A stretch of 64,000 bases of DNA from Macrostomum lignano (lineage: Eukaryota). The notes beneath the pieces were generated by a model. It saw only the letters and a list, made by a program, of their open reading frames with translations, did no database searches and was not told the origin of the DNA. Positions 20,101 through 58,294 of this stretch are shown here, one piece after another (within the stretch, counting starts at the first letter, position 1; each line of letters begins with the position of its first letter). The stretch spans positions 78,522-142,521 of the forward strand of contig NIVC01002056.1 of NCBI GenBank assembly GCA_002269645.1, given 5' to 3'. Made by a program: the position numbers and the translations under genes.

Positions 20101-20620
20101 GTCGATGAGTATTTAGATCTTCCCTTGCTCCAGTAGACTTTGGACTTGCCCTTAATTTTCACGACAATATCTGCAAGTGCAAAAGGGTTTTGAGCAACCA
20201 ACTAAAGGTACTAATTTTGGTTTATATTTGTGAAAGTAAACTGAAAGATATATTATTCCTCAAATCATAACAAGACAGTCACTAAGAAGACATTTCTGAG
20301 TGCTGGCAACAGGTCTCCGAGGTTCCGTTACAGATGTCCACTGTCCCAAAGAATACTCTAACTCAGGGCGGTCCTTGGAAACTTCACAATAGCAATCCGC
20401 CCGCTCAATGTTTACATCTCTTCCCACCGCTCTTCTTTCTAATCTTCTCTCTCCTCTCTCCTCTCTTCTCTTCTATTCCCAGTGACTCACTTTCGCACTC
20501 GGTAGGCTGCTGGCAATAAACCCTGACTTTGAGTTGAACTGTCTGACCAGCTCGATAGATGGCGTGCGGATTCGAGTTGGCATCGTCGAAAATAATTTGC
20601 AGAATTTCTGATTCGCTCAT
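17123..20620 (-). CDS. ARRDC: Divergent alpha-arrestin, copy B, 6 coding exons, about 329 aa, no PPxY
   Basis: Exons 20620-20491, 20170-20066, 19234-18807, 18221-18042, 17860-17740 and probable last exon 17148-17123 (AINKKLGD*). Intron positions and phases match copy A. The last exon is inferred from phase and the AT-rich 3' UTR; read-through of exon 5 to a stop at 17723 is the alternative. Confidence 0.82.
18280..18750. repeat. 32 bp minisatellite (CCAACCCCACTGCAATAAAATTCCACAACTCG)
   Basis: CCACTGCA recurs at 18381 and 18413; intron 3 of arrestin B. Confidence 0.95.
19290..19985. repeat. 19 bp minisatellite (CACTACTGTGACAGAGGGA) with a 123 bp higher-order repeat
   Basis: The variant TGTGACAGAGGTG recurs at 19561, 19684, 19807 and 19930; intron 2 of arrestin B. 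Confidence 0.95.
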
Positions 20621-39600: not shown

Positions 39601-42600
39601 CTGAGCACTCTACAATAGAATCTGAGCACTTCTACAATACAATCTCAGCACTCTACAATGGAATCTGAGCACTCTACAACAGAATCTGTGCACTTCTACA
39701 ATAGAATCTGGGCACTTCTAAAATAGAATCTGAGCACTCTACAATAGAATCTGAGCGCTCTACAATAGAATCTGAGCACTTCTGCAATAGAATCTGAGCA
39801 CTCTACAACAGAATCTGTGCACTCTACAATAGAATCTGAGCACTCTACAAAGGAATCTCAGCACTCTACAATGGAATCTGAGCACTCTACAACAGAATCT
39901 GTGCACTTCTACAATAGAATCTGGGCACTTCTAAAATAGAATCTGAGCACTCTACAATAGAATCTGAGCGCTCTACAATAGAATCTGAGCACTCTCATTA
40001 GGGTCTGAGCATTCTCATTAGGGTCTAAGCACTCTCTTAAGTTAAAGAAGAATCGCCGAAGATTCAGGCGATCGCTCATCTTTGATAGCTTACGCGGAAT
40101 AACCTGGCCACCAGGCTGCGGCTGCTGTTTGATGACGTCACTCATTGGCGCCGTTGGCAGCGGCGGTGGCATTCCGAAAGTCGACCAGAGCGGCACGCTG
40201 CCGATCAGCAGCTCGCAGCACTCTTTCTTCACCGACAGGCAGCAGCCGCCGTCTGCGTTTAGCTGGACACAGGATGAAAAAATGTACGAGTGCACTTTGA
40301 TTGCTACTGATGTACTTTTGATGGCACTCGTGTACTTTTAACGGTACTGATGTACTTTTGACGGTACTAGTGTACTTTTAACGATCCTGATGTACTTTTG
40401 GTACTAAATTGGTGAATGTTACTAAAAAACTTATAACGTTACTGGTGTACTTCTCATGAAATTGAGTACATTTATAATAGTACAGATACATGTAATTTAA
40501 ATTTCTAATGTTAATATGATACACTTTCAAGATAAGCGAGGTCGGCAATAAGCTTTTATTCGTTCCTTTAGAATCAGATTACTTGATAAAAATAACTTCT
40601 AAATAGTAATTTCAACCTACTCGAAAGTAGTAGTGCACGCGTATATTGTTGCAGCCTTCAATGTGCGAACTGGGCACGGGGTTGACCGGCAGAAGATGGT
40701 TGAGCTGCATCGACTGGCCCTGCTCAATGCCGGACAGGCTGACAGAGGACGCCACGCGGGACGAAGTTTTGCGCTTGCTGGGCGTTATGAATATGCTTTG
40801 CTGCAATGGCGGGATGGAATGTAGGAACTTGGGTTAGTTAAGTGAAATTATGTCAGAAATCGATGCTAGTCCTGTACTCTACAACTCACTTGAACGTTAC
40901 AGAATTCAAAACAGTATTTCTTTTTACAAACAGAATACTCTGTGCTTGATTGTGCACAGGGTCAGGTGGGCTAACGCCCCCAACTGCCCCTGTCCTTCCC
41001 CCGCCCTCCGCAGGGCCCTGCTTGGACTCAACCGCAGGGACATCAGGGCGGTAACCATGGGCCCTCTCGGGTCCGCTACCTGAGGGCTACAGGGCGAGCG
41101 ACAATCCACTCCTGGACTCTCCTGAGGGGGACCATGCTGCACCACCGGATTTCCCTGCGCGACACCGCAGCACCAGGGGTTAAGCGGAATGGGCGGTGAC
41201 GCCTCCCCCTGTATCCGGAGCCCCATGCAGCCAAGTCAAGTGCTTAACTTTTTACAAGCCTTGATGTGTTGGACTTCATAGATCCTCTACTAAACTGAAT
41301 AATCAGACATCAGACAACAAAACAAAGACTGCAGGATTAAAAGCCCTGGTCATCTGGTCTCTGCTCTGTTCTGGATAATTGCTGAGAATCATAACCTCCC
41401 CACTTTACGATATGCTCATTCTATCTCTGCAACTTGTGAACTTTTGGTTAAAAAAAGGTGAAGCTGTAGACTGTAGGTTAAACAAGTTAGCCAGACCTGA
41501 TAAATCTCCAGGTTGACGCTCTCCAAGTTGGTCTTGCTGGTATTGCAGATCTCACCAGTGATGTGCACCTGTTCTCCTGGCACGTAGCCTTTCTTAGGCA
41601 GGGCTACGCTGACTCTAACTTTGCCACAGCAACAATTGAAGCAATAACAGCACTTTACGTCAAAATCCTCCTCGGATTTGAACGGTCCAACCTCGTCGGG
41701 TAGGCGAATGTTCAAGTCTAAGTCGCGAATAACGGTGAAATTTTTTTTGGTGTAGTCGTCAAACTTCCATGGCCGATCAATTTTAGCCTTGATCTCATAG
41801 CGAATTCGACCGATGCCGGATTCGAATGACGATGGAGCAGTCGGCGGTAGTTGAAACGTCACTGGGTAGATGTACTCCCCAGCTGGGTGGTGCTCCGCCG
41901 AGGGGCCCACAGTCTCGGGAGCTGTTAAGGCGGCGGGCACAACAAGGATGTGCAGCTGCGCGAATGACTAATAGACCAATAGATACTGTAGCTATTGACA
42001 CTATACCGATACAAGGTGACGTAAAAAATGCAATCTGCTCAACTATAACAATTTTAGCATGGTTAAAACTCCGCTTCGATCACAAGCACATGGCGTTCGT
42101 CCGACAGTCTAGCATATGGTACACGATTCTGGGACTGATCTTGCTCCTCCGCAGCAGTTGCAAAGTAAAATATAGAGGTGAAAATATAGAGCCGCTATGG
42201 ACCAAATTGATGCTTGTCGGATTGTTAAAAAGCAGAAAGCTTTAGGGTCCTAAATTCAACTGAAATTCTGAATTCGTAATCATTTATGCTGAAATAACGA
42301 CCGCTCTGAAAGTTTTTCATTAAACAATCGCTGTGCGTAAGATACAATGACGTTGCATAGTAGGTAACGGACCGTTACCTGCTATACAATCCACCATTAC
42401 TTTCACAAGCATATCTTGGATTAAGTGCCTGAGCGGTAAGAAACTGAACTAAATTCCCTATTTTATCCCTAATTATTCCTTTACTCAGTCCAAATTTAGG
42501 CAAACCACAAAACAAGGCCGACTGTCTTCTCTTGTCTGCTATCCTCTACCGGTTACTCCTCCTTCCTCTCTGCTAGTTCAACCCTTTTTACTATAGAATG

Positions 42601-44262
42601 AGTGAAGCAAAACGCTTATTTCTTGAAAAACCGAATCGAAGACTCGGAGGACGAAAATCCCACGAGCTAAAAATGCTTGTATTTATAGCCGCTTGGAGCG
42701 AGGTTGCGGTGCGCGGGGTAGGTTGTAACAAAAATCAATTTAAACAAAGTTTTCTTCACGTTAATAAATTTTCCGTCTATAACAACATATAATCCACTTT
42801 AACAAATATCGTTGACTTAAACAAAATATCCGATTCAAACAAATTATTTACGTAACTAAAGGATGTTTTTAGCGGAGATTCAAAATAGGGCGTGCCTTAC
42901 TAGTAAATTTTCATAATTATTCATAATTAGTCTTTTCAACCTTAAAAATTTTTTGAAGCCGCTTTGGATTTTTTGCTAGTTTACATGTACTAAATTTTGC
43001 GCACTCATATGGCAAATCTGATCTTCCCAAAGAGGAATCATTGATTAATGTAAATTTGCTTGCTGCAAATATAGACTTGAACATATTCCCTTTGAATTTC
43101 CAATACGGAAGTTACATACAAGCAAAAATTGACAATTCAAACAGATCTCACTGTAAATAGCCACTTTCTGATCGATGTAAACTTCCTCAGATCTGTAGTG
43201 CACCGTTTCAGTTCGACGGTTGTTGCCAGATCCGGTTGACCTGCTCTCGGTCCAGTGTACGTAAGAATTGCCGAATAGCTTAACGTATATCGCTGGAGTA
43301 GATAAGTGTTGGGTGTGATTACTAAATTACGCTAAGCTGACTTAATTTCAGATGGAGGTCCAATCATTTCGAGATTGGGGGGTTGTAAAGTCGATTGCAA
43401 GTATGAAAAGATTTGAAAATGTTCGCTTTCCAAAACACAAGTGTTGTACGAGTATAACAATCAGATTGTATCAGGAAGATTTTTAGCTAAACCTCGATAC
43501 GCTAAACTAAAGCAGAAAGATTGTAATAATTATAATAATGATAATTGATTACACCCACCCCAATTGGGCCAGACGTGTAACCGACAGCTCAGCCGCAGCT
43601 ATTGCAGGCGCATCTGAAGGCTGCGTACGGCTGTTCAGTTCAAAGACTGGGGGGTCGCCACACACCTCAATTACCCCAGCTAATGCTGGTGCCCATTTTA
43701 CAGCTGAATGAACTGAAGCAATACAGAGTTAAGTGTCTTGCTTAAGGACACAAACTGTTCCAGTGGGATCAGGAATTGAACCCCCCGACCTTCAAGTCGT
43801 GAGTCTGACGCTCTAACCACTAGGCTACAACCCCTACTAGAAGGATTGTACACTGATCGATCACTGATCCTCACAACTGCGAAAGAAGCAAGCATGTTTC
43901 TTTTGCGTAAAGTTGATTCAAAAGTTTTCGATATAAAATTAGTAATTATTTTGGTTAATCAGTACAGACATTTCGTGTATAGTAGTAAAAAAGGAAAATA
44001 CGAGTATTCTATCGCCCCTATTAAATTTGTAAGCTTGTAAGTGCAACAGCCTTCTATGTTTGTTTTTAAATATTAAAAGCATGTAAAAATGAAATGTTTT
44101 ATAATTTATTGTAGCTTGAAACAGTGTGTACCAACCTCTGCACTTGACAGGCTCGGTCAGTCTCAGGTGAACCTGGAATGCGATGGTCTGACCGGAGCGG
44201 TACACAGCCTGTGGATTCACCTCGGCATCGTCGAATACAATGTCGAATATTTCCACTTTCAT
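36642..44262 (-). CDS. ARRDC: Alpha-arrestin, copy C, 6 coding exons, 406 aa
   Basis: Exons 44262-44136, 43292-43152, 41921-41497, 40800-40621, 40262-40094, 36820-36642; GT-AG, 1221 nt. Exons 1, 3, 4 and 5 have the same lengths as in copy A (127, 425, 180, 169 nt). C-terminal PPSY. Confidence 0.93.
36865..38080. repeat. 21 bp minisatellite (CTACAATAGAATCTGAGCACT), left block
   Basis: Directly visible, about 58 copies; last intron of arrestin C. Confidence 0.98.
38081..39357 (+). mobile_element. Decayed Crypton/DUF3504-type tyrosine recombinase, 5'-truncated
   Basis: One frame 38150-39157 with stops at 38351 and 38708, plus an upstream frameshifted piece (DGKPYAVSTLTCFRA). Motifs GFCGRE (GxRGRE with R>C), CPVRAIELY, TNHCIRA (HxxR), TGHKRIESVDLY (H and catalytic Y) and C-terminal FGNCKFENCTFNF. 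Confidence 0.85.
39358..40036. repeat. 21 bp minisatellite (CTACAATAGAATCTGAGCACT), right block, more diverged
   Basis: Same unit and orientation as 36865-38080; decays after about 39995. Confidence 0.97.
40958..41241 (+). mobile_element. 3' fragment of a non-LTR retrotransposon (I/LOA/R1-like C-terminus)
   Basis: RVRWANAPNC...LRRALLGLNRRDIRAVTM(A)LSG resembles the LLxLSRxDxRxxxxxLTGH segment after RNase H in these LINEs; GC-rich island ending in a CAAGTCAAGT tail. Confidence 0.45.
42670..42730 (-). promoter_or_regulatory. LTR-start-like segment with TATA box inside intron 2 of arrestin C
   Basis: Minus strand TGTTACAACC...GGCTATAAATACAAGC shares CTATAAATACAAGC with the element at 24660; no 3' end or TSD established. 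Confidence 0.3.
43520..43834 (-). mobile_element. tRNA-derived SINE with CORE-like body, copy 2
   Basis: A-box TAGTGGTTAGAGCG (43822-43809), B-box GGTTCAATTCC (43782-43772), body GCAAGACACTTAACTC...CAGCTGTAAAATGGG resembling CORE-type SINE cores, AT-rich tail; second copy at 32365-32670. Confidence 0.82.
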
Positions 44263-46269: not shown

Positions 46270-48153
46270 TTATTGTCCACCAGAATATGGTGCACCACCT
46301 TGCTGTGCAACCGGATATGGTCCACCACCTGGTTGTGCACCAGGATATGGTGGTGCACCACCTGGCTGTGCACCAGGATATGGTGCACCACCTGGCTGTG
46401 CACCAGGATATGGTGCACCACCTGACTGTGCACCAGGATATGGGGCAGAACCAGGCTGCATGCCAGGGTAAGAAGCATCGCCAAAAAAGCCACCCGAAAT
46501 TCCGGCACCACCAGCGGCTGACGGAGCGTCGTTGCGAACTCGAGGCGGACCAGCTCGAATTCCGCGACGCCTCATCCACTCGCACACCTGATTCGGAAGC
46601 TCCGCCAGTACCTCCTTCGCCAAGGCATACCTGCTGCGATCAATGTTGCCACCCTGAATGAAACGACGCAAAGGAACGAATTGGACGACATCTCTTTCGG
46701 CGATCATCGACCCGCAGCGAAGTCGTTTGTCGTCTGAGTCCAGATCCTTCATAGCCGAGAAGTCCTCGTTTCCGACACCAACTATGATTATAGACATCGG
46801 TAGAGATGACGCCTTGATGATTGCCTGCTTCGTCTTCTCGAAGTCCGTGATGATTCCGTCAGTGATGATCAGCAGTACAAAGTACTGAGCTCCTGTCTGG
46901 TGAGCCGCAGCCATTGACGCTACGTGGTTGATCACGGGCGAAAAGTTTGTCGGGCCGTACAGTCGCACCGCTCTGATGCAAGACCGATAGGCCGCGAGAA
47001 GACCTGGCATTCCTGCGCAGTACGGGTTTTCGGACTGCAGAGTCAGCGAGAACGCATCCTGAACTCCCGAGAACATTGGAGGCAACAGAGCTCCGAAGCC
47101 CAGTCCGGGAAACTGCTTGTCTGAGTCGTAGTCCTGCACAATCTCTCCTACCGAAATTATCGCCAGCTCGTACTGGTTCGGTCGGCCGTCGGCGCTCACG
47201 TGGTGCAGCGAGCGAGGGTCTCTGGGGTCTCCATTGCTACCCGTGAAGTCGATTGCAACCGTGAAGTGCAGCTCAGTGCCGCCCTGAATGTAGTCGACGA
47301 ACGAGTCGATGGTCTCGATTCCGATCTGGCTGAACACGATGGTTCCAGCCGACTTTTTCTTCTTGCTGATGAGGGTTCGTTGGGCGGAGCGGCTCCGGGC
47401 GACCTCCTGCTCCAAGCTCTCCAGGCTGCTGTAAAAGCTTCCTATCAGATCATGAGAGCCGTCTCCGTCATAATCATAGCAATCAAATCGTAGGATTAAA
47501 CGCTTATTACCACGACAGATTCGAGCGACTGGTACAGAAAACATTGCCCATCGTGGGTTCAAGTTATTCTTAATAACCTCCGTTCGATGCACAAGAGACC
47601 AATTGCGAACGTGGTTTAACTCGTCTTCGCTTGTTACATCTTCAAGTGGTTGATAGATTTCAAGAAATGGATCTGATTTGCCAAGAAAGTCTTTTTTATC
47701 AAGTTTGTGCCCTTCAATTTGAAAGTTAACAACTTGCTTGCACTCTTGAACTTCTACACAGTTTACAGTAATGATGGACGTCTTCGAACTTTTTGTCCTG
47801 CAAAGTTTAGTTTCGAATCGACGTCGGCTTACAAGCTCGCCGATCGAAGTCTCCAACTCGCCGAGAAAGTCGTGCTCAGACAGTCGAGCACTCGGACTGT
47901 CCAAGTCGTAAATTTGAAACTTCACCAGCTGACGCTCCTCGAACATGAAGTCGACAATGAACCGATGGCTGAATTCGGGATCAAGCGTGTTGTTCAGTCT
48001 CTCAGTTCTGCCGATTTCTTGAAAGTTGGAAGTTCCCGGCTGGCGCAGGAACAGGACGCACTGAGGATCCGACTTGGAGGTGACGTCGCGGTCAGGCAGA
48101 TTTCTGCAGGACACGCTGATCTCAACGCGACTGGTTAGGCTTGGGCCGGACAT
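46270..48153 (-). CDS. CPNE: Copine (C2A-C2B-vWA) copy 1, intronless CDS, 627 aa, PYPGAQPGGA-repeat tail
   Basis: Single ORF with C2 motifs DRDVTSKSDP/YDLDS/HDFLG and DKKDFLGKSDP/YDYDGDGSHD, vWA motifs AIDFTGSNG, YGPTNFSPVINH, LLIITDG and PMSIIIVGVG. ATG at 48153 is directly preceded by TTACAG. Confidence 0.95.
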   Translation of the reverse strand: MSGPSLTSRVEISVSCRNLPDRDVTSKSDPQCVLFLRQPGTSNFQEIGRTERLNNTLDPEFSHRFIVDFMFEERQLVKFQIYDLDSPSARLSEHDFLGELETSIGELVSRRRFETKLCRTKSSKTSIITVNCVEVQECKQVVNFQIEGHKLDKKDFLGKSDPFLEIYQPLEDVTSEDELNHVRNWSLVHRTEVIKNNLNPRWAMFSVPVARICRGNKRLILRFDCYDYDGDGSHDLIGSFYSSLESLEQEVARSRSAQRTLISKKKKSAGTIVFSQIGIETIDSFVDYIQGGTELHFTVAIDFTGSNGDPRDPRSLHHVSADGRPNQYELAIISVGEIVQDYDSDKQFPGLGFGALLPPMFSGVQDAFSLTLQSENPYCAGMPGLLAAYRSCIRAVRLYGPTNFSPVINHVASMAAAHQTGAQYFVLLIITDGIITDFEKTKQAIIKASSLPMSIIIVGVGNEDFSAMKDLDSDDKRLRCGSMIAERDVVQFVPLRRFIQGGNIDRSRYALAKEVLAELPNQVCEWMRRRGIRAGPPRVRNDAPSAAGGAGISGGFFGDASYPGMQPGSAPYPGAQSGGAPYPGAQPGGAPYPGAQPGGAPPYPGAQPGGGPYPVAQQGGAPYSGGQ

Positions 48154-49586
48154 CTGTAATTTTTTGCACAAATTTTCTATCGCTTAAGTGTTGAAAAATT
48201 GTAGGAACATCTCAACTTAAGCCATACTGACTGACAATTAGGCTAGTTCTGTCGGCTGTAAACTTAAGTATTGCGTTGGATATAGCATTGAGACACAGTC
48301 GGGGCTTATATTATATATTAAAAAAATTGAACCTTAAAATACAGAAGAAACAAACATTTATTTTGCAACCAATTTACCGCCAAAACATTAAGCTAAATAT
48401 AGAACCATGGCGGACGCACCAAGTTTAATCTAGTAAAAGCAAGGTAGAAATAAAAATTGCTTGCTTCATTTACGCAACTATGTAGGTCATTGCTTCACTT
48501 TCGTCGCTTTGCGAAAAGAGTTAGTCATCTTTTCAGCAAAGCTTGCTACAGGCAAGAGAGAGACACTTAAGCGCCTGTTCAATAACCAAACACACGTAGC
48601 ACTGAAGCAAACTCGTAACAATATAATGCTTTCGTATACGTGATGCTTGCATACTACGAATTTCTAGCGACTGCCAAAACCACAAAATATCTTTACTGTC
48701 TTGTTGTGTGGGTTAGTATGCCAGAACCTTGTGCAAACATTCAGTGTAGCTATTTCAACTCGATTTGTAAGGCCACATTCGAATACACGCTGAGCATTCA
48801 AGTGTATGCTTATCGAGAAAATCTAAAAATAGCCTGCTTCTCAAACTTAATAAGATATGGTAGCTACATTTAGATTCAATGTACGCTCGTGCAGTATATT
48901 CATCGCCATATACTAAATTTAGTATACAATTAATATATTCTGAAACTCTGAATAGCTTCCAGAAGGTCGTCTAGCGTAATCACTTATTCATAGTTTCAGT
49001 TAAAATAAATTGACTAAAAAGCAATGTTTTTCGCCAGGAAAACCTCTGGGAGCTATACGTATATTATTCACAACTAGCGTAAACTGGCAAAACTTCACGG
49101 ATCGCAGGACAGTAACAAAAAACAAATAATTATAAAGGAATAAAGACGGATTGCTTTTTTAACGCTGAATAAACACAACTGGAACCTCCATCGGACATTG
49201 TATGGATGTGTATGGATCCTAAAAATATGTGTATGGATAGGCTTGTACATATCCTTTATAGCTTACTTTTCGTTAATGTAAGCAATGGTGGTATGAGTAG
49301 AACCGAGAGCTTCGAACCGGATTGAAACATAGAGAGAAATATATGGCCGGGAAATTGCGTTGTAGGCAAAGTTCTGCGTGTTGACGTAACTACTGATTGC
49401 TTCTCTTAGAGAGAAATCACCTGATTGGTTACTATACAGTGAAAAATCGATTAAATATGTGTATTAATATGATACAAAAGCTCTGATTTAGTAAATACCT
49501 GGAGGATGAAGTATTGTATACGTCATTCCAAACTATTGTAGTAGTGTCAGTGAATGGAGCACACACGGCACAGAGGGAGGCGTGGG

Positions 49587-50296
49587 CACAGAATATTACA
49601 TGCGAGCAAAGAGTATTTGAGGTCGCCCAGTATAGAGTGCCAATAAGGATGAAAATCTGAAGCCGATTTTTAGAATCCACCAACCCCTCCGGTCACCAAG
49701 CCTTCCAGTCTATGGCACAAGTTGTGGCTAGAATGATGTACAAAGCCGATGCTCAGAAATATAAGACATCTCACACTTAGAAAATGCATGTATCAAATAA
49801 GCAGGACAACATCGCTCAGTCACCAGACTCAGTTGCCGTCGTCGATACACAACTCCGTAACAGTCATGCCATATAGCCTTATCACTTATGCCTTTTGCTT
49901 TTCCCATTGCTGCACCTTCACTCTGCTTGTTTATCACTTTGTTTTTGTCTTTCCGACTCAGCTGCAAGAATCCTGCTCAACTTCTTTTCTCCTTACACAA
50001 TGCAATCATCGTACGTACGGTTACAGTATAGATACAGAAATAAAGTCTTGAGGACGTCTTAAGCATACATGGTATTCGTCCAGCTACATTAGCTACTTGT
50101 ATTTTTCTCATGCACTCTATGTATATTTCTGAGCATCGGCTTTGTACGCCATTCTAGCCACAACTTGTGCCATAGACTAAAAAGCTTGGTGACCGGAGGG
50201 GGTGGGTGGATTCTAAAAATCGGCTTCAGATTCTCATCCTTATTGGCACTCTATACTAGGCGACCTCAATACTCCTTGCATACGAGTAATTCTGTG
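49587..50296. mobile_element. Foldback element with ~180 bp inverted arms
   Basis: About 49587-49770 is the reverse complement of about 50122-50296 (e.g. AAGCCGATTTTTAGAATCCACC versus GGTGGATTCTAAAAATCGGCTT); no TSD seen. Confidence 0.75.
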
Positions 50297-50318
50297 TAAA
50301 TTCCTTGGATGTGGGGAA

Positions 50319-50693
50319 CATAGATAAAGTATACATAGATTCCACCCCTACCCCCGCGGAGTGTCTAAACTGTGACCATCACTTTATTCACTGCGCTCCT
50401 ATTGGCTGGGCCACGCTATGCACATTGAGTCCACGTGTGTACATTCCCCCAACTTGCGTGTCGACTTCATTCTTGCTAAACTGTTGAAACTGGTAAGACA
50501 TCCTTTCGTTCCGCTTCCGTTTCGTTCCCGTTCCGCTTGTGTGGAAGGGGTGAGGGAATGAAATCGAAGGGGTTGAAAGGAAGGCTTTCGCGCCAGCCAA
50601 TGAGAGCACGGTGAGTTTTATGGTGGTCAAAGTTTGGACACGAGCGTGTGTACATTCTGGGCAGGGGTGGAATCTATGTATACTTTATCTATG
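50319..50693. mobile_element. MITE, 375 bp, with perfect 8-bp TSD
   Basis: TIR CATAGATAAAGTATACATAGATTCCACCCCT at both ends; GTGGGGAA duplicated at 50311-50318 and 50694-50701. An 8-bp TSD fits the hAT or P superfamily. Confidence 0.9.
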
Positions 50694-51844
50694 GTGGGGA
50701 AGAAGCCCTCGCTATCTACCATAAACTAAGTTTCACTGCAACAGGCTAAATAAAAACGTTTCTGTAGTCTATGGCCGTGCCTAAGCGGGGAATGAACTTT
50801 ACTTAGTGTATTTTGGTATGATATTAGCAAGGCTGCAAAAAGTAACAAACTGGACTCAAAATGAGAAGCAAACAACAGCATAAAAACAAAACAATTTTTG
50901 GTTGCAGAAAAAAATATAAAATTGTCGATAAAAATTCTGCAAGAACAATACACATTAGATTAAAAATGTGCTGCAAAATTTAAGAAATCATCACTTTTCG
51001 ACAATAGCAATGTAATTATTCATATTTAATTTGTTGTACAACATAGCTAGCTGTACCGAAATATTAAATTCAACACATAGACACTTAATATTATAGATAT
51101 AAATATTTAGCTCAAGACACTAAGCGTAGGAAAGAAGCGATCCTTAGTTTAAAACACAGTTTAGAGCTAATTATAAAATTGATAATAGAAACGCCGATAC
51201 GGAAGCCAACAAAAGCAGTAAAACATAATTAAAATGATCTACTGGATTTGAAAATTGCTCTATAGGAAACACTTTTTACGATTATACTTGAATAGTGACT
51301 GGTTACAAGCAATTTAAGCACTAAAATATTACATGATTAATTCAATAATTAGAATTTTTATCGTCAATATTGCTTTGGTCGATTAAGAGCTCATTCACAC
51401 CGCCATTAAACAACGCCAAGTTTCATGTCATTACAAAATTTGTACATTCTACATTAACTCCTTCTCAACATCAGTCGTGGAGTGCCGGCCATAAAACAGC
51501 CATGATATCTGAGAGCTTGTGCACGAGTGCGCAGAAGTCAGCGGAATGGGCCTTACAGTCTGTAGGGACGAAATCACCGAAGGCGTTGCATTAGAGAGCC
51601 CACGATCCCTTTATTACAGTGAATGACTGTAAACGCTTCATTTATGACAATATGATGACGGTGTGAAAAAATTATGGTGACAAGAAATCACTGTTTTAAT
51701 AAATAAAGTACGAATGTTTAGCTATTGGTCATCATTGATTAAAACTCAAAATTCTTGATGCAGTGCTGCATAACTGCAATTTTTATCGGTAAAGTGGACA
51801 GGAACATCCAACCTGAACATAAACAAATGTACAATAACATCGAT

Positions 51845-53743
51845 TCAAGGAGCACTGGGAGGCACACCCAGATACGGAGGTACTGAAGCCTGGGCGCCGC
51901 CAGAAGCGGCAGGATAGGCCGGCGGTGGTGCAGTCGGAGCCGCAGCTCCAGGAGCATAGACTGGACCTGCAGGATAGCCAGGCTGAGGGGCGCCAGGATA
52001 TCCTGGACCCGATTGAGGCACACCGGGATACGGAGCACCAGGATATTGAGCTCCTCCTGGTTGAGTGCCAGGGTACGGAGCGCTTCCAGGAATTCCGGCA
52101 CCACCAGCAACTAACGGAGCGTCGTTGCGAACTCGAGGCGGACCAGCTCGAATTCCGCGACGCCTCATCCACTCGCACACCTGATTCGGAAGCTCCGCCA
52201 GTACCTCCTTCGCCAAGGCATACCTGCTGCGATCAATGCTGCCACCCTGAATGAAACGACGCAAAGGAACGAATTGGACGACATCTCTTTCGGCGATCAT
52301 CGACCCGCAGCGAAGTCGTTTGTCGTCGGAGTCGAGCTCCTCCATCGCAGAGAAGTCCTCGTCTCCGACACCAACTATGATTATGGACATCGGTAGAGAT
52401 GACGCCTTGATGATTGCCTGCTTCGTCTTCTCGAAGTCCGTGATGATTCCGTCAGTGATGATCAGCAGTACAAAGTACTGAGCTCCTGTCTGGTGAGCCG
52501 CAGCCATTGACGCTACGTGGTTGATCACGGGCGAAAAGTTTGTCGGGCCGTACAGTCGCACCGCTCTGATGCAAGACCGATAGGCCGCGAGAAGACCTGG
52601 CATTCCTGCGCAGTACGGGTTTTCGGGCTGCAGAGTCAGCGAGAACGCATCCTGAACTCCCGAGAACATTGGAGGCAACAGAGCTCCGAAGCCCAGTCCG
52701 GGAAACTGCTTGTCTGAGTCGTAGTCCTGCACAATCTCTCCTACCGAAATTATCGCCAGCTCGTACTGGTTCGGTCGGCCGTCGGCGCTCACGTGGTGCA
52801 GCGAGCGAGGGTCTCTGGGGTCTCCGTTGCTGCCCGTGAAGTCGATTGCAACCGTGAAGTGCAGCTCAGTGCCGCCCTGAATGTAGTCGACGAACGAGTC
52901 GATGGTCTCGATTCCGATCTGGCTGAACACGATGGTTCCAGCCGACTTTTTCTTCTTGCTGATGAGGGTTCGTTGGGCGGAGCGGCTCCGGGCGACCTCC
53001 TGCTCCAAGCTCTCCAGACTGCTGTAAAAGCTGCCGATAAAATCGTGCGACCCGTCGCTGTCGTAGTCGTGGCAGTCGAAGCGAAGTAGCAGCTGCCTGT
53101 TTCCGCGGCACAAACGGTTCAGTGGAACCAAAAATTTGGCCCATCGCGGGTTCAAATTGTTCTTGATTACTTCGGTACGATGTACAAGTGTCCAATGTCG
53201 GACTTTATTGACTTCATTTTCACTCGTAATTTCCTCCATTGGCTGATAAATTTCAAGGTAAGGATCGGATTTTCCAAGAAAGTCTTTTTTGTCAAGCTTT
53301 TTTCCTTCGGCAATGAAACTGACTATTTGTTTGCACTCTTGAAGCTCGAAACACGTGATTATAATTGTGGACTTCTTGTGTCCAGTTTTGGACAAAGTAG
53401 TTTCGAATCGACGTCGGCTTACAAGCTCGCCGATCGAAGTCTCCAACTCGCCGAGAAAGTCGTGTTCAGACAGTCGAGCACTCGGACTGTCCAAGTCGTA
53501 AATTTGAAACTTCACCAGCTGACGCTCCTCGAACATGAAGTCGACAATGAACCGATGGCTGAATTCGGGATCAAGCGTGTTGTTCAGCTTTTCAGTTCTG
53601 CCGATTTCTTGAAAATTAGAAGTTCCCGGCTGGCGCAGGAACAGGACGCACTGGGGATCTGACTTGGAGGTGACGTCGCGGTCAGGCAGATTTCTGCAGG
53701 ACACGCTGATCTCAACGCGACTGGTGAGGCTTGGGCCGGACAT
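51845..53743 (-). CDS. CPNE: Copine copy 2, intronless CDS, 632 aa, Pro/Tyr/Gly tail with PTAP, PPAY and terminal PSAP
   Basis: Single ORF with the same C2-C2-vWA motifs as copy 1; tail ...AAAPTAPPPAYP...VPPYLGVPPSAP*. Confidence 0.95.
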   Translation of the reverse strand: MSGPSLTSRVEISVSCRNLPDRDVTSKSDPQCVLFLRQPGTSNFQEIGRTEKLNNTLDPEFSHRFIVDFMFEERQLVKFQIYDLDSPSARLSEHDFLGELETSIGELVSRRRFETTLSKTGHKKSTIIITCFELQECKQIVSFIAEGKKLDKKDFLGKSDPYLEIYQPMEEITSENEVNKVRHWTLVHRTEVIKNNLNPRWAKFLVPLNRLCRGNRQLLLRFDCHDYDSDGSHDFIGSFYSSLESLEQEVARSRSAQRTLISKKKKSAGTIVFSQIGIETIDSFVDYIQGGTELHFTVAIDFTGSNGDPRDPRSLHHVSADGRPNQYELAIISVGEIVQDYDSDKQFPGLGFGALLPPMFSGVQDAFSLTLQPENPYCAGMPGLLAAYRSCIRAVRLYGPTNFSPVINHVASMAAAHQTGAQYFVLLIITDGIITDFEKTKQAIIKASSLPMSIIIVGVGDEDFSAMEELDSDDKRLRCGSMIAERDVVQFVPLRRFIQGGSIDRSRYALAKEVLAELPNQVCEWMRRRGIRAGPPRVRNDAPLVAGGAGIPGSAPYPGTQPGGAQYPGAPYPGVPQSGPGYPGAPQPGYPAGPVYAPGAAAPTAPPPAYPAASGGAQASVPPYLGVPPSAP

Positions 53744-54772
53744 CAGGAACAAGTTAGTACCGATTAAACTCGATTCGGTTTAATACAGATTACCGCCCGT
53801 GTAATTAGTGTAGCTTTACTTTACTTGCATAGAAAAATGTCACCCTCATAATGCTACAATCGATGAGCAAAGTAAACATCCTGCCCTAAAATAGGTTTGC
53901 TGTTATCGTACTTTACTCGTTCAGGATCTGAAGAATGAGATTATATGCCTATGCAAGAGGCCATTGGCAATGAACTAATCTTAGTAATTACGACCTAGTT
54001 CTAGATTAGGCATGCAAACTTGGCTGAAGTTACTATTTTAGAAAGATTAACTGGAATGTTGTCAAGAAGCAGTAAATGATTTATTAACTAATAATTTTAT
54101 CGTACTTTTGCACAATTCCATAAGGAACAATTTAAATATTTGGAAAATCAGCACTTTTTGAATAAGCGAGATTTTTTTAGGCCTTGATCAAGTAATATAA
54201 CGAAGCAAAAATATAATGAATATACAATTTCATTATTTAGCTTGACGGCAATGTCGGAATAGCAGACGTACCGGTAGGTATTCAAAACCAGTAAATATTA
54301 ATTTCGTGGATACATGATTTAAAAACATACAATTGCGGCAAAATTGGATTGGCAAATAGTAGCAGTATAAATAGAGTGGGAAAAGTATTTTAATTAAAGT
54401 ACAAAACAGTTCACGTCCTATCCATCGGATGCATTAATCCTCTCTTGTGGAAAGCAAAAGCAGAATAACTATTTAGTAACAAGAATTATATTTTCATAAC
54501 TACTGACGCGCAGTACTTTAAATTACGATTTCCAATATCATTCTATAGAAAAATTAATAATTTCGATAATTCCGTCAGACAGTAAATTAGGCCCTTTTAT
54601 TGCCTCTACTAGTAATACAAATTAAAGCCAGCTTAGATCATTAACAGCTAGCAGAAACTCTGCCGATTACAATAGAAAACCAGTTTGAATCTTTTTTAGG
54701 CATCTCAACTTTATGACAATTTGGTTAGGATGCATTCGAGTTGCTGATACTGGCATAGAATTTCTATTCCTT

Positions 54773-55740
54773 TCAGTGTGGCCATAGATAAGTGAAACAA
54801 GCGGGGAATAATGTATCGGTATTTATTCCCCACTACTCAGGCCTGGCCATAGACTATAGGAATGTATTCCTTCGGCCTGGCGCAATAAAACCAAGGACGA
54901 CTTAAGTAGAAGGACGGGAAACCTCGTTTCTTAGAAAATTTTTGAAGGCACTTTTTTTCCGAAAAAATACACTGCGGAGATAGGAAATTTTCATTTTTTC
55001 AGCACAAAAATTGCTATTACTTTTGATAGGAGGCAGATCCAGTGTTCATCTTTTGATATGTTGTGCCTTTTTTATTGCTCTATCGATATTTATAAGGCTT
55101 TTCGTTCAGAAAATTAGATTTCTATGTTAATTTTTCATTCTACGTATATTTCCTGTACCTGAAAATCACAATAATGCATGACACAGCTCCAATATTTGGT
55201 TTTATGAATCTATTTTATCATCTCTGTTACGAATATTTGCTACACAGTCAGTTAAGAATGACAAAATAGACTTATGAAACCAAAGAGCCGAGCCGTGGCA
55301 GTCTAATGTATTTCAAGCACAAGACGCGCGAAAATATACGTAAAATAAAAAATTAACATAGAAATCTAATTTTCTGAACGGAAAGCTTCATAAATATCGA
55401 TAGAGCAATAAAAAAGGCACAACATATCAAAAGATGAACACTGGATCTGCCTCCTATCAAAAGTAATAGCAATTTTTGTGCTGAAAAATGAAAATTTCCT
55501 ATCTCCGCAGTGTATTTTTTCGGAAAAAAGTGCCTTCAAAAATTTTCTAAGAAACGAGGTTTCCCGTCCTTCTACTTAAGTCGTCCTTGAATGAAACTCC
55601 AATAAATATGTTTCTATAGTCTATGGCCGGGCCCAAGTGGGAAATAATAAACATTATAAGCTAGTATATGCTACTTAAACGCACTATAGTTTAATTTATT
55701 CAGAGGAAAAAGCTGTCTATGGTTGCAACTGAGGGCTTCA
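54773..55740. mobile_element. Older palindromic element hosting the 54892-55589 MITE
   Basis: GCCTGGCCATAGACTATAGGA (about 54841) and TTCTATAGTCTATGGCCGGGC (about 55612) are inverted; a related sequence occurs at about 50760-50795. Confidence 0.4.
54892..55589. mobile_element. hAT-like MITE, 698 bp, ~255 bp TIRs
   Basis: Ends CAAGGACGACTTAAG...CTTAAGTCGTCCTTG; flanks AATAAAAC (54884-54891) and AATGAAAC (55590-55597) form an 8-bp TSD with one mismatch. Confidence 0.88.
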
Positions 55741-56126
55741 CCCTCACACCAAATACTGGCCCCACACCGACTGTCGCAATGGCAGTGTGACTTAGGCATA
55801 AATGTCTATGACACCATATTAATAGGATAGCCATAGCAACTCTTGACTCCAAAACAAAATGATAAAAAAATGAAAAAGCCATTAAAAGCTACAAATTCAA
55901 TGCACATGGGTAGGCTGGATGATAAATAAGAGCATTAAAACAATACTGAAAAATCAACGCATCGAATTCCTTTAAACGAAATAAATTAAAGAGTAATTAC
56001 AACAGCAGACGTATTGTTTTTTTAAATGAGGAGATTACAAGACAATTCAAGACAAATAGAGCTAGCCATCAATGTTTTATATCAAATTTATACAGCAGAC
56101 AGCAAGACTCGCAAAAAATCGTCTGT

Positions 56127-58294
56127 TTAAGGAGCACTGGGCTGCGTCCCTCCGGCTACAGAGTAATTTTGAGCCAAGTGGCCATAGCCGGCTTGACGAG
56201 AGCTCACTTGAATACCGGGGTAATTTGCGGCGCCATACTGGCCTGGACCAGTAGGATATCCTCCAACATTTTGATAAGCACCAGGATACCCTGCGCCACC
56301 AGTAGGGGCACCAGGATACCCTGCGCCACCCGCATGGGCACCAGGATACCCTGCGCCACCCGTAGGGGCACCAGGATACCCTGCGCCACCCGCATGGGCA
56401 CCAGGATACCCTGCGCCACCCGTAGGGGCACCAGGATACCCTGCGCCACCCGCAGGGGCACCAGGATACCCTGCGCGACCCGCAGGGGCACCAGGATACC
56501 CTGCGCCACCCGCAGGGGCACCAGGATACCCTGCGCCACCCGTAGGGACACCAGGATACCCTGCGCCACCCGTAGGGGCACCAGGATAAGAAGGAGCTGA
56601 AGCAGGAGAGCCATCAGTACCTGGTGCGGCAGTAAATGAGGATGGGGCAACAGGGCCTGACGCTGGAACATTTGAATCAGATCGCACTTTAGGCGGACCA
56701 GCTCGAATTCCGCGACGCCTCATCCACTCGCACACCTGATTCGGAAGCTCCGCCAGTACCTCCTTCGCCAAGGCATACCTGCTGCGATCAATGTTGCCAC
56801 CCTGAATGAAACGACGCAAAGGAACGAATTGGACGACATCTCTTTCGGCGATCATCGACCCGCAACGAAGTCGTTTGTCATCGGAGTCGAGCTCCTCCAT
56901 CGCAGAGAAGTCCTCGTCTCCGACACCAACTATGATTATGGACATCGGTAGAGATGACGCCTTGATGATTGCCTGCTTCGTCTTCTCGAAGTCCGTGATG
57001 ATTCCGTCAGTGATGATCAGCAGTACAAAGTACTGAGCTCCTGTCTGGTGAGCCGCAGCCATTGACGCTACGTGGTTGATCACGGGCGAAAAGTTTGTCG
57101 GGCCGTACAGTCGCACCGCTCTGATGCAAGACCGATAGGCCGCGAGAAGACCTGGCATTCCTGCGCAGTACGGGTTTTCGGGCTGCAGAGTCAGCGAGAA
57201 CGCATCCTGAACTCCCGAGAACATTGGAGGCAACAGAGCTCCGAAGCCCAGTCCGGGAAACTGCTTGTCTGAGTCGTAGTCCTGCACAATCTCTCCTACC
57301 GAAATTATCGCCAGCTCGTACTGGTTCGGTCGGCCGTCGGCGCTCACGTGGTGCAGCGAGCGAGGGTCTCTGGGGTCTCCGTTGCTGCCCGTGAAGTCGA
57401 TTGCAACCGTGAAGTGCAGCTCAGTGCCGCCCTGAATGTAGTCGACGAACGAGTCGATGGTCTCGATTCCGATCTGGCTGAACACGATGGTTCCAGCCGA
57501 CTTTTTCTTCTTGCTGATGAGGGTTCGTTGGGCGGAGCGGCTCCGGGCGACCTCCTGCTCCAAGCTCTCCAGACTGCTGTAAAAGCTGCCGATAAAATCG
57601 TGCGACCCGTCGCTGTCGTAGTCGTGGCAGTCGAAGCGAAGTAGCAGCTGCCTGTTTCCGCGGCACAAACGGTTCAGTGGAATCGAGAATGGAGCCCATT
57701 TTGGGTTTAAATTCTTTTTAATGAATTCGGTTCTGTGCACCAAGACCCAACTGCGAACTCTGGGTACTTCTGATTCAGTTTGTATTTCATCCATCGGCTG
57801 ATAAATCTCCAGAAAAGGGTCAGACTTGCCAAAGAAGTCTTTCTTGTCAAGTTTGACGCCTTCGACGCGAAAATTGGCAATTAGTTTGCACTCCTGAAGC
57901 TCCAAGCAGGTCAGTATAATGAGAGATTTTTTGTACTGCCAGTCTTGGTCAAAGCCGCCTCGTACTGTCGCCGACTGACAAGTTCACCAACAGTGGTCTC
58001 AAGTTCGCCTAAAAAGTCATGGTCCTGCAGGGCTGCGCGCGAGCTGTCAACATCGTAGAGCCGAAAAATGACTACCTGTCTTTCCTCGAAGCAGAAGTCT
58101 ACTTGAAACTTGTGATTGAATTGCGGGTTTAGGGTGTTCTGTATGCATTCAGTGCGACCAAATTCATGCGTTGATGTTGGCGTTTTCATGAACAGGACAC
58201 ACATTGGATCAGATTTGGACATGACATCACGATCTGGCAAGTTCTTGCAAGAGACAATGATCTCCACCCTGCTAGTGAGCTGAGGAGCTGCCAT
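56127..58294 (-). CDS. CPNE: Copine copy 3, intronless, interrupted by a 1-nt frameshift at 57927-57932; about 722 aa if corrected
   Basis: ORF 58294-57911 encodes C2A; ORF 57905-56127 encodes C2B-vWA-tail. One more A in the A6 run restores TKKSLIILTCLELQECK, matching copy 2 (HKKSTIIITCFELQECK). Ends in PSAP*. Confidence 0.88.
56280..56590 (-). repeat. Coding 30 bp repeat encoding YPGAP(T/A)GGAG, 10 full copies plus 1 partial
   Basis: CACCAGGATACCCTGCGCCACCCG(T/C)AGGGG at 30-nt spacing on +. Confidence 0.95.

What the first reader, a model, noticed from the sequence alone, without database searches (positions are those of the whole stretch)
46270..58294. Copines with ESCRT/Nedd4 late-domain motifs next to a PPxY arrestin array: a candidate Ca2+-triggered membrane budding or repair module
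Seen: copines 2 and 3 both end in PSAP*, encoded by the same CCCAGTGCTCCT although the tails are otherwise unalignable. Copine 2 also has PTAP and PPAY; copine 1 has PPYP; arrestins A and C have PPxY and a terminal ATAPP. Established: P(S/T)AP binds the TSG101 UEV domain (ESCRT-I); PPxY binds Nedd4 WW domains; PPYP-type motifs bind ALG-2; mammalian ARRDC1 uses PSAP plus PPxY to bud microvesicles; copines bind phospholipids in a Ca2+-dependent way. Inference: these copines may recruit ESCRT-I directly to Ca2+-exposed membranes, and the two co-expanded, adjacent families may act together. Adjacency in an animal genome does not itself imply shared function.
Basis: partly seen in the sequence, partly recalled or inferred. 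Interest (0 to 1): 0.72.

Follow-up and report, generated by a model that had tools for sequence, protein, structure and literature searches.

The report
Flatworm copines with ESCRT-type tail motifs
Three tandem calcium-sensor (copine) genes of the flatworm Macrostomum lignano carry floppy proline/glycine/tyrosine-rich tails, two of which end in PSAP. I find the same end-of-tail motif far more often than chance in copines from protists to fish, so a link between copines and the ESCRT membrane-budding machinery is a real and testable hypothesis, whereas the neighbouring arrestin genes look like coincidental neighbours.

Summary
The window is Macrostomum lignano contig NIVC01002056.1. It holds three intronless, minus-strand copine genes (2×C2 + copine/vWA). 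Copines 2 and 3 end in PSAP*, encoded by the same 12 nt. Copine 2 also has adjacent PTAP and PPAY. Copine 1 has one PPYP and no PSAP. Copine 3 carries a 1-nt homopolymer frameshift that another gene model reads through.

The paralogs are old: synonymous sites are saturated in the C2 regions and dN≪dS. About 0.9 kb of the vWA region has been homogenised by gene conversion. The tails are coding 30-nt minisatellites.

The main result is that terminal P(S/T)AP is not a local curiosity. In 31 long copine tails it lies in the last 36 residues of 20 (about 1 expected). In 95 independent representatives it occurs in 13 (1–1.7 expected). Residue preferences match P-[ST]-A-P exactly. PPxY is enriched too. 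Named carriers include a trout, a trematode, nematodes and euglenids.

A conserved C-terminal late-domain-like motif on copines is therefore well supported. TSG101 or Nedd4 binding remains untested. The strict ALG-2 motif is absent. Arrestin–copine linkage was absent at four other copine loci. I found no literature on copine P(S/T)AP or PPxY motifs.

The parts
46270..48153 (-). Copine 1: intronless CDS of 627 aa from the ATG (2×C2 + copine/vWA + 105-aa PGY tail). It ends ...APYSGGQ* and has no P(S/T)AP.
   Evidence: ORF; Pfam PF00168 ×2 and PF07002, E=8.7e-79; tail motifs. No gene is called here in the GenBank annotation shown for L001.
46274..46458 (-). Coding 30-nt minisatellite in the copine 1 tail (about 6 copies of the decapeptide GGAPYPGAQP). 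It contains 5 PYP and the single PPYP (46342-46353).
   Evidence: TRF period 30, 6.1 copies, 85% matches; motif coordinates.
51845..53743 (-). Copine 2: intronless CDS of 632 aa (= P0001). Its 111-aa degenerate PGY tail ends in PSAP*.
   Evidence: ORF; Pfam; exact match to the database protein on contig NIVC01002056.1.
51914..51937 (-). Adjacent PTAP (51926-51937) and PPAY (51914-51925) in the copine 2 tail, a back-to-back P(T/S)AP-PPxY cassette.
   Evidence: The same order, P[ST]AP then PPxY at the extreme C-terminus, recurs in other copines (P0063, P0071, P0178, P0214, P0225).
51848..51859 (-). Terminal PSAP codons of copine 2 (CCCAGTGCTCCT), followed directly by TGA.
56127..58294 (-). Copine 3: intronless CDS of about 722 aa with a 1-nt deletion in an A-run at about 57927-57928. 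Its 202-aa tail ends in PSAP*.
   Evidence: ORFs 58294-57911 and 57905-56127 lie in different frames. P0122 reads the site in frame. Pfam.
56278..56588 (-). Coding 30-nt minisatellite in the copine 3 tail (10.4 copies of GGAGYPGAPT; 11 GYP).
   Evidence: TRF period 30, 94% matches, score 552.
56130..56141 (-). Terminal PSAP codons of copine 3 (CCCAGTGCTCCT), followed directly by TAA.
52133..53033 (-). Gene-conversion tract (copine 2 coordinates; equivalents are about 46540-47440 in copine 1 and about 56688-57588 in copine 3). The vWA/copine domain is 98-100% nt-identical in all three genes, while the C2 regions are 58-73% identical except that copines 1 and 2 share a 95-99% identical C2A. The outer flanks and 3' regions are 23-47% identical, and the repeat tails are only weakly alignable (14-66%).
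   Evidence: Sliding identity. Nei-Gojobori: vWA pS 0.01-0.05, against pS 0.47-0.80 in the linker+C2B region and 0.86-0.90 in copine 3's C2A.
36642..44262 (-). Arrestin C (alpha-arrestin/ARRDC-like, 6 exons, about 419 aa): 44262-44134, 43296-43144, about 41931-41494, 40803-40618, 40277-40092, 36820-36642. PTAP at 40146-40157; PPSY at 36807-36818; then APSYP...AATAPP plus 15 aa.
   Evidence: tblastn with the Macrostomum arrestin P0127 and tblastx of A against C; GTAAG donor and CAG acceptor read; Pfam Arrestin_N + Arrestin_C.
5466..9877 (-). Arrestin A (ARRDC-like, 6 exons): 9877-9749, 9606-9466, about 9321-8893, 7517-7332, 6752-6568, 5608-5466. PPTY at 5595-5606; ends ...APSYPVFAMATAPPPQ*.
   Evidence: Pfam.
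18030..20608 (-). Arrestin B, a diverged paralog (38-41% aa identity to C). Exons were detected at 20608-20471, 19220-18804 and 18242-18030; the tail exon was not found. Arrestin-like fragments with in-frame stops lie at 15330-15163 and 29159-28989.

Best explanation
What is shown.
- The region holds three tandem, intronless copine-8-like paralogs of Macrostomum lignano.
- They are old duplicates under purifying selection whose vWA domain is kept identical by gene conversion.
- Each has the complete Ca2+/phospholipid-binding architecture (two C2 domains with the conserved Asp clusters, and a vWA domain with the DxTxS MIDAS-like motif). Each also has a disordered C-terminal tail built from a 10-residue Pro/Gly/Tyr repeat that expands and contracts as a coding minisatellite.
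- Downstream of the repeats, copines 2 and 3 keep an identical terminal PSAP. Copine 2 adds an adjacent PTAP-PPAY pair.
- A P-[ST]-A-P motif in the last ~7-35 residues, often with a PPxY, is a selectively maintained feature of copine tails across eukaryotes.

What is inferred.
- The terminal P(S/T)AP is a docking site for the UEV domain of TSG101 (ESCRT-I), and the PPxY is a docking site for Nedd4-family WW domains.
- When Ca2+ rises (wounding, signalling), the C2 domains bring the copine onto the plasma or endolysosomal membrane. The tail then brings ESCRT-I and a HECT ligase there. This would nucleate ESCRT-III-dependent shedding or repair, or sort the copine and its vWA-bound partners into vesicles.
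- The PYP/GYP repeats probably act like the N-terminal PGY regions of annexin A7/A11, as multivalent low-affinity sites for penta-EF-hand proteins or for self-association. That part is weaker.
- Copine 1 lacks the motif and would be a subfunctionalised or competing paralog.
- The arrestin genes next door are ordinary PPxY alpha-arrestins and are not required for this model.
For: Domain architecture. Invariant Ca2+-loop Asp residues and the vWA D301/T303/S305 in a 27-sequence alignment.

Organism and contig.

Purifying selection and conversion: (pN 0.12-0.25 against pS 0.77-0.90 in the unconverted C2 comparisons; vWA pS 0.01-0.05).

Terminal PSAP with identical codons.

Family-wide enrichment:
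- 20 of 31 long tails have P[ST]AP in the last 36 aa, against 0.58 expected (whole-tail shuffle) or 1.13 (shuffle within the last 36 aa).
- 13 of 95 representatives clustered at 50% identity have it, against 1.04-1.68 expected.
- PSAP occurs in 19 tails, against 0-4 for ten of the eleven other orderings of P, P, S, A.
- Motif density is about 6 times higher in the last 36 aa than upstream. In the last 36 aa, PxAP has x = S 27, T 11, G 7; P[ST]xP has x = A in 38 of 51; P[ST]Ax has x = P in 38 of 43.
- PPxY in the terminal window: 22 observed against 4.5 expected in the last 30 aa, and 25 against 6.0 in the last 36 aa.

Taxonomic breadth.

Precedents: annexin A7 → ALG-2 → ESCRT-III repair (PMC6491720); sorcin/annexin A11 (PMC13486606); copines in the Ca2+/injury surface proteome and copine-4-ALG-2 binding (PMC5037681); NEDD4L ubiquitinates CPNE1 (PMC10666796, which cites the primary study). 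That P(S/T)AP binds the TSG101 UEV domain and that ARRDC1 uses PSAP+PPxY to bud microvesicles is established knowledge; I did not re-derive it here.
Against: - No binding, localisation or expression data exist for these genes.
- In Macrostomum the PSAP is the very C-terminus, whereas most other copines have at least 3 residues after it (modal start 7 residues from the end). A free carboxylate on the last Pro could weaken UEV binding.
- Copine 1 lacks the motif, and copine 3 is frameshifted in this assembly.
- The closest Macrostomum paralog (P0004) has PPPY but no P(S/T)AP.
- Most listed copines have tails of 35 residues or fewer, and these were screened only in part. The motif is therefore not essential to being a copine.
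- Strict ALG-2 ABM-1 is absent.
- I did not confirm that M. lignano TSG101 has the PTAP-binding pocket.
- The relatedness of the sequences inflates significance somewhat, although the 50%-identity representatives largely address this.
Confidence: 0.5

Rival explanations
1. The motifs make the copine a client rather than a recruiter. PPxY attracts a Nedd4-family ligase that ubiquitinates the copine. P(S/T)AP then helps sort the membrane-bound copine, and whatever its vWA domain holds, into multivesicular bodies or extracellular vesicles for turnover or export. ESCRT assembly itself is not triggered by the copine.
For: NEDD4L ubiquitinates and destabilises human CPNE1 (PMC10666796, citing the primary study). 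PPxY is as enriched as P(S/T)AP at copine C-termini. From my own knowledge, untested here: copines are common extracellular-vesicle proteome components.
Against: Sequence alone cannot separate this from the recruiter model. Both need the same contacts, and ARRDC1 and retroviral Gag are both recruiters and cargo.
Confidence: 0.2
2. The functional unit is the PGY repeat region, not the late-domain-like motifs. On this reading it is an annexin-A7/A11-like low-complexity region that binds penta-EF-hand proteins (ALG-2, sorcin, peflin) or drives Ca2+-dependent self-association on membranes. The terminal PSAP would then be a minor or different ligand site, for example a generic PxxP for SH3 domains.
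For: Tandem PYP/GYP decapeptides occur in copines 1 and 3. Long PGY/Q-rich tails are widespread in copines. The ALG-2 review accepts PYP/PxYP and variable spacing as '1-like' sites in annexins A7/A11 and TSG101 (PMC5037681).
Against: ABM-1 is not met, strictly or relaxed. Repeat sequence and copy number are not conserved, whereas the terminal P-[ST]-A-P is, with residue preferences more specific than PxxP. The motif also occurs in short 28-33-aa tails that lack repeats. This reading is compatible with the best explanation rather than exclusive of it.
Confidence: 0.15
3. The copine array and the adjacent PPxY arrestin array are a co-evolved, co-regulated unit that acts together in Ca2+-triggered budding.
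For: Three copines and three arrestins (plus two arrestin-like fragments) lie on one strand within 53 kb. Arrestin C carries PTAP plus PPSY, the ARRDC1 combination.
Against: No arrestin lies within 10 kb of the paralogous Macrostomum copine loci L002 and L003, the Owenia locus L004 or the Lottia locus L005 (the Lottia locus was checked by its called-gene list only). Intergenic distances of 2-4 kb and separate repeat-laden introns argue against an operon. PPxY is generic to alpha-arrestins. Tandem duplication of both families is sufficient to explain the picture.
Confidence: 0.07
4. The motifs are chance products of Pro/Ser/Ala-rich low-complexity sequence and have no function.
For: Within the window alone, the per-tail shuffle probability of one P[ST]AP is 2-8%. 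One of the three copines lacks it.
Against: Family-wide excess is 8-18-fold under two shuffle nulls (p below 1e-5 by simulation). The motif is confined to the last ~36 residues whatever the tail length (25-277 aa). Only the PSAP/PTAP ordering of the four residues is enriched. The 15-nt end is identical in two paralogs whose synonymous sites are otherwise saturated.
Confidence: 0.03

Closest known systems
Copine family (Pfam PF07002; animal copine-8/copine-3-like, including nematode NRA-1)
   Same: Two N-terminal C2 domains plus the vWA-like copine domain. Identity to invertebrate copine-8-like proteins is 45-57%. Many invertebrate relatives also have long PGY/Q-rich tails with a terminal P(S/T)AP or PPxY. 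Ascaris NRA-1 ends ...QPSAPPPP.
   Different: These genes are intronless, whereas the closest Macrostomum paralog has 5 exons. They form a tandem triplet with a gene-converted vWA domain. The tails are recent 30-nt minisatellites, and PSAP is the literal C-terminus. No publication found here treats copine tails as late-domain carriers.
Annexin A7 / annexin A11
   Same: A Ca2+-dependent phospholipid-binding core is fused to a Pro/Gly/Tyr-rich disordered region. That region binds penta-EF-hand proteins and couples membrane damage to ESCRT-III (PMC6491720, PMC13486606, PMC5037681).
   Different: The fold is unrelated (annexin repeats, not C2/vWA). The disordered region is N-terminal. The link to ESCRT is indirect, through ALG-2/ALIX or sorcin, rather than through a P(S/T)AP. 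The resemblance of the repeat sequences is recalled from memory and was not tested.
ARRDC1 (alpha-arrestin that buds ARMM microvesicles)
   Same: A membrane-associating protein whose C-terminal tail combines PSAP (TSG101) with PPxY (Nedd4-family ligases). Copine 2 has PTAP-PPAY...PSAP, and several other copines have P[ST]AP followed by a terminal PPxY.
   Different: ARRDC1 has an arrestin fold and constitutive plasma-membrane association, with no Ca2+ switch. The window's own arrestins are members of this broader family. Arrestin C has PTAP+PPSY, and arrestin A has only PPTY.
Cellular and viral P(S/T)AP / PPxY late domains (HRS, ALIX, retroviral Gag, filovirus matrix proteins)
   Same: The same short linear motifs sit in disordered Pro-rich segments, sometimes back to back.
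   Different: Those interactions are experimentally established. For copines the motif is defined only by sequence conservation.

Membership tests
Copine family | Two tandem N-terminal C2 domains | tested here: met
   PF00168 matches twice in copines 1 and 2 (E about 1e-28), and once in each half of the frameshifted copine 3.
Copine family | C-terminal vWA-like 'copine' domain (PF07002) with a MIDAS-like DxTxS | tested here: met
   PF07002 E = 4e-79 to 1e-78, matching profile positions 1-216 of 218. D301, T303 and S305 are invariant in the 27-sequence alignment.
Copine family | Conserved Ca2+-coordinating Asp clusters in the C2 loops | tested here: met
   D29, D83, D85 and D95 (C2A) and D151, D154, D160 and D226 (C2B) are invariant across the alignment, including the window proteins. 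Ca2+ binding itself was not tested.
P(S/T)AP late-domain carriers (TSG101-UEV ligands) | P-[ST]-A-P in an accessible disordered segment | tested here: met
   Copine 2 has PTAP and a terminal PSAP; copine 3 has a terminal PSAP; copine 1 has none. The tails are low-complexity repeats.
P(S/T)AP late-domain carriers (TSG101-UEV ligands) | Evolutionary conservation of the motif beyond composition | tested here: met
   Observed/expected: 20/0.6-1.1 and 13/1.0-1.7. The effect is position- and order-specific.
P(S/T)AP late-domain carriers (TSG101-UEV ligands) | Direct binding to the TSG101 UEV domain and ESCRT-dependent function | not testable with these tools
   This needs peptide-binding and cell assays.
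Nedd4-WW ligands (PY motif) | [LP]PxY in a disordered segment | tested here: met
   Copine 2 has PPAY; copines 1 and 3 have none. Arrestin A has PPTY and arrestin C has PPSY. Binding was not tested.
ALG-2 binding motif type 1 (ABM-1) | PPYP and YP separated by 4 residues (PYP/PxYP tolerated), per PMC5037681 | tested here: not met
   No match to PPYP.{4}YP or P.?YP.{3,5}YP in any of the three tails. YP units recur every 10 residues, giving a spacing of 8. Only a loose '1-like' resemblance remains.
Alpha-arrestins (ARRDC/TXNIP) | Arrestin_N + Arrestin_C domains with a PPxY-bearing C-terminal tail | tested here: met
   Pfam PF00339 + PF02752 on the central exons of A, B and C. PPxY lies in the last exons of A and C. 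B's tail was not found.
Annexin A7/A11-type repair adaptors | Annexin repeat core | tested here: not met
   Pfam finds only C2, Copine and vWA domains. The resemblance is functional analogy, not membership.

The most novel reading that the evidence does not exclude
Copines are an ancient, so far unrecognised class of Ca2+-switched ESCRT adaptors. Their C-terminal tails carry conserved P(S/T)AP and/or PPxY late-domain motifs from euglenids to animals. These motifs would recruit ESCRT-I (TSG101) and Nedd4-type ligases to membranes the moment Ca2+ rises. That would supply a direct Ca2+-to-ESCRT-I link for membrane repair or ectosome budding, and the Macrostomum triplet would be a lineage-specific amplification of it.
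Probability: 0.3. Interest if true: 0.8.

Novelty: new variant of a known kind. Interest (0 to 1): 0.6.

Why it matters
Copines are conserved and abundant, yet their cellular role is still poorly defined. How a Ca2+ influx is turned into ESCRT recruitment at damaged or budding membranes is also an open question; the known routes go through ALG-2, annexin A7 and annexin A11. A selectively maintained P(S/T)AP/PPxY cassette at the end of copine tails would give a simple, directly testable mechanism. C2 domains sense Ca2+ and bind the membrane, and the tail docks TSG101 and Nedd4 ligases.

The hypothesis is cheap to test with peptides and point mutants. It applies to tractable animals: Macrostomum, and nematode NRA-1-type copines (the motif was seen in Ascaris and Auanema; C. 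elegans was not checked). It would also explain why copines turn up in injury proteomes and, from my own knowledge, in vesicle proteomes. The arrestin adjacency should not be over-interpreted.

Tried and rejected
- A protein search with the copine 3 tail alone returned nothing: 300 word-sharing candidates, none scoring E ≤ 0.001, possibly because the query is low-complexity. The recalled similarity to annexin A7/A11 N-termini therefore stays untested.
- A search with the arrestin C central exon found only three relatives. That was enough to map exons but not to survey arrestin tails.
- The genomic context of the Lineus, Patella and Antedon copines is not on record. Synteny could be examined at only four other loci, each with 10-kb flanks, which is low power in large genomes.
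- Strict and relaxed ALG-2 ABM-1 patterns were searched in the tails and rejected.
- I looked for a decayed PSAP end downstream of copine 1 and found none.
- I considered copine 3 a pseudogene. This is unlikely, because the only defect is a 1-nt change in an A-run that another model lacks, and dN/dS is low.
- I considered chance. It was rejected using shuffles of the whole tail, shuffles of the last 36 residues only, permutation controls and position-specific residue tables.
- The Rfam and tRNA scans add nothing relevant to the finding.

Full report
**Identity of the window.** Copine 2 is identical to a database protein (P0001) encoded on contig NIVC01002056.1 of assembly GCA_002269645.1. Its cluster mates carry Macrostomum lignano names. 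The window is therefore from this free-living flatworm. It is dense in minisatellites.

**What is at 46270-58294.** Three long minus-strand ORFs lie in this region. They are copine 1 (48153-46270, 627 aa from the ATG), copine 2 (53743-51845, 632 aa) and copine 3 (58294-56127).
- Pfam gives two C2 domains and the copine/vWA domain for each (PF07002, E about 1e-79).
- In a 27-sequence alignment, the Ca2+-loop aspartates and the vWA DxTxS are invariant.
- All three genes are intronless. The nearest Macrostomum paralog (P0004/P0123, 55-57% identity) has five exons. A retrocopy origin followed by tandem duplication is therefore likely; this is an inference.
- Copine 3 is split by a 1-nt deletion in an A-run at about 57927-57928. 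An independent UniRef gene model reads the site in frame, as GSTKKSLIILTC. I treat the defect as an assembly error or an allele rather than decay.

**History of the paralogs.** A DNA alignment shows a mosaic.
- About 0.9 kb of the vWA region is 98-100% identical in all three genes.
- The C2A region is 95-99% identical between copines 1 and 2 but about 60% identical to copine 3.
- The linker and C2B are 58-73% identical.
- The outer flanks and 3' regions are at noise level, and the repeat tails are only weakly alignable.
- By Nei-Gojobori counts, pS is 0.77-0.90 in four of the five unconverted C2 comparisons and 0.47 in the partly converted copine 2/3 C2B region, with pN 0.12-0.25. In the vWA tract pS is 0.01-0.05.

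These are therefore old duplicates under purifying selection, with ongoing gene conversion of the vWA domain.

**The tails.**
- Copines 1 and 3 carry tandem 30-nt units (6.1 and 10.4 copies). They encode GGAPYPGAQP and GGAGYPGAPT. The units look related by eye but were not aligned.
- Copine 2 is a degenerate version.
- Downstream of the repeats, copines 2 and 3 both end in PSAP*, encoded by CCCAGTGCTCCT followed by T[G/A]A. These are the only exact matches to that 15-mer in the window, and there is no remnant after copine 1.
- Copine 2 also has PTAP immediately followed by PPAY.
- Copine 1 has one PPYP and ends in SGGQ*.

**Is PSAP more than chance?** Inside the window alone it is only marginally so: residue shuffles give 2-8% per tail. 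The decisive evidence is comparative.
- Among the best 120 relatives of copine 2, 29 have tails of 45 aa or more. Many are Pro/Gly/Tyr/Gln-rich (Lineus, Tubulanus, Owenia, Ptychodera, Antedon, Patella, several bivalves).
- With copines 1 and 3 added, 20 of 31 tails have P[ST]AP within the last 36 residues, whatever the tail length (47-277 aa). The expectation is 0.58 from whole-tail shuffles, or 1.13 when only the last 36 residues are shuffled.
- PSAP occurs in 19 tails. Ten of the eleven other orderings of P, P, S, A occur in 0-4 tails. The eleventh, SAPP, overlaps PSAPP.
- A profile search of 1.84 billion representatives clustered at 50% identity gave 95 largely independent copine tails of 25 aa or more. 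Thirteen have P[ST]AP in the last 30 residues (1.04 expected, or 1.68 under the conservative null). The modal start is 7 residues from the end.
- PPxY is enriched as well: 22 observed against 4.5 expected in the last 30 residues, and 25 against 6.0 in the last 36.
- In the pooled terminal windows, PxAP has x = S 27, T 11, G 7. P[ST]xP has x = A in 38 of 51. P[ST]Ax has x = P in 38 of 43. Upstream, PxAP is dominated by the repeat-derived PGAP.
- Named carriers of the terminal motif include Salmo trutta copine-3, the trematode Calicophoron, the nematodes Auanema and Ascaris (NRA-1), and the euglenids Entosiphon and Ploeotia. Sea-urchin and holothurian copine-8 have it in 33-aa tails.
- Several copines show P[ST]AP followed a few residues later by a terminal PPxY (P0063, P0071, P0178, P0214, P0225). 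Copine 2 has the same order.

The pattern is what is expected of a short linear motif under selection. Its residue specificity is that of the TSG101-UEV ligand.

**The arrestins.** tblastn and tblastx and splice-site reading give three alpha-arrestin genes on the same strand.
- Arrestin A spans 9877-5466, arrestin B about 20608-18030 (diverged, tail not found), and arrestin C 44262-36642. Two arrestin-like fragments carry in-frame stops (29159-28989 and 15330-15163).
- A ends ...PPPTYEECMFGRV...APSYPVFAMATAPPPQ*.
- C ends ...PPPSYAECMFGRV...APSYPYFPLAATAPPAAAQASRWKTGATVA*.
- PPxY is therefore present, as in alpha-arrestins generally. ATAPP is not a P(S/T)AP motif and is not terminal in C.
- Arrestin C does have a true PTAP in exon 5 (40157-40146), which gives it the ARRDC1-like PTAP+PPxY combination.

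**Linkage.** No arrestin lies within 10 kb of the paralogous Macrostomum copine loci L002 and L003, the Owenia locus or the Lottia locus. The Lottia locus was checked only through its called-gene list. Three other loci could not be retrieved. The paralogous copine sits 2.2 kb upstream of a VPS25 (ESCRT-II) gene, which I record as a curiosity. Nothing beyond adjacency supports a copine-arrestin module.

**ALG-2.** The review PMC5037681 defines ABM-1 as PPYP and YP four residues apart, tolerating PYP or PxYP and perhaps variable spacing. It lists copine-4 as an ALG-2 partner through its vWA domain. It also notes copines and annexin A7 in the injury surface proteome. None of the three tails matches ABM-1, strict or relaxed; the YP spacing is 8. 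The tails are at most '1-like', as in annexins A7 and A11.

**Mechanism.**
- Shown: the genes have a complete copine architecture and are under purifying selection. They have disordered PGY repeat tails. A terminal P(S/T)AP (± PPxY) is conserved across the family.
- Inferred (confidence about 0.5): Ca2+-driven membrane binding by the C2 domains places a TSG101 and Nedd4 docking tail on the membrane, coupling Ca2+ to ESCRT-dependent repair, shedding or sorting. The repeats may add penta-EF-hand binding or self-association. This parallels annexin A7 → ALG-2 → ESCRT-III (PMC6491720) and sorcin/annexin A11 (PMC13486606).
- Rivals: the copine is cargo or a turnover substrate (NEDD4L-CPNE1, PMC10666796). 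The repeats alone are the functional element. The arrestin module idea. Chance, which is effectively excluded.

**Novelty.** Six full-text searches found no paper that treats copine tails as P(S/T)AP or PPxY carriers. The 'PSAP' co-occurrences appear, from the paper titles and abstracts, to be the gene symbol (prosaposin) or the PSAP motif of ALIX rather than a copine motif; only PMC5037681 was opened to confirm this. The genes themselves are ordinary new members of the copine family. The conserved late-domain-like C-terminus is a new variant of a known kind of adaptor logic. The library does not cover subscription journals, so prior description cannot be excluded.

**Verdict.** Interest is 0.6.

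Noticed in passing
L003 17688-18233 (contig NIVC01003313.1): The closest Macrostomum paralog of these copines (Mlig006534, 5 exons, tail with PPPY but no PSAP) lies 2.2 kb upstream, on the same strand, of a VPS25/ESCRT-II gene. An older UniRef model even fuses the two (P0126, named VPS25). This is probably coincidence, but it is notable given the ESCRT hypothesis.
   Followed up: partly
window 57927-57928: Copine 3 has a 1-nt deletion in an A-run that splits its frame. An independent gene model reads through it, which suggests a homopolymer error in this assembly or an allelic difference. The GenBank annotation calls only a 354-aa fragment of copine 3, and no gene is called over copine 1.
   Followed up: partly
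window 52133-53033, 46540-47440, 56688-57588: About 0.9 kb of the vWA-coding sequence is 98-100% identical in all three copines, while their C2 regions have saturated synonymous sites. This is a clear gene-conversion tract with sharp edges.
   Followed up: yes
window 63251-63391 (-): An exon encodes an insulin-like A-chain (…CCCRTCTVRYLSGYC…). The GenBank annotation has a PF00049 insulin-family gene here, just upstream of the copine array.
   Followed up: no
window 33109-36368; also 29461-31363, 11045-12685, 36860-38080, 39358-40035, 8174-8793: The window has very large minisatellites, for example a 28-nt unit ×116 that gives long spurious ORFs. Several sit inside arrestin introns. The first intron of arrestin A also holds an (ACTG)n run at 9642-9735.
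   Followed up: no
window 43764-43834 (-): A weak tRNA-like Rfam match (31.9 bits against a gathering score of 29) lies inside intron 1 of arrestin C. ARAGORN does not call it. It may be a tRNA-derived repeat or a decayed tRNA.
   Followed up: no
window 40146-40157 (-): Arrestin C has a genuine PTAP in exon 5, upstream of its PPSY. This gives it the ARRDC1-like motif pair. Arrestin A has PPAP at the equivalent place.
   Followed up: partly
L005 26072-32246 (Lottia gigantea KB202283.1): The Lottia tail-bearing copine is next to a second copine gene in tail-to-tail orientation, so local duplication of copines is not unique to Macrostomum.
   Followed up: no
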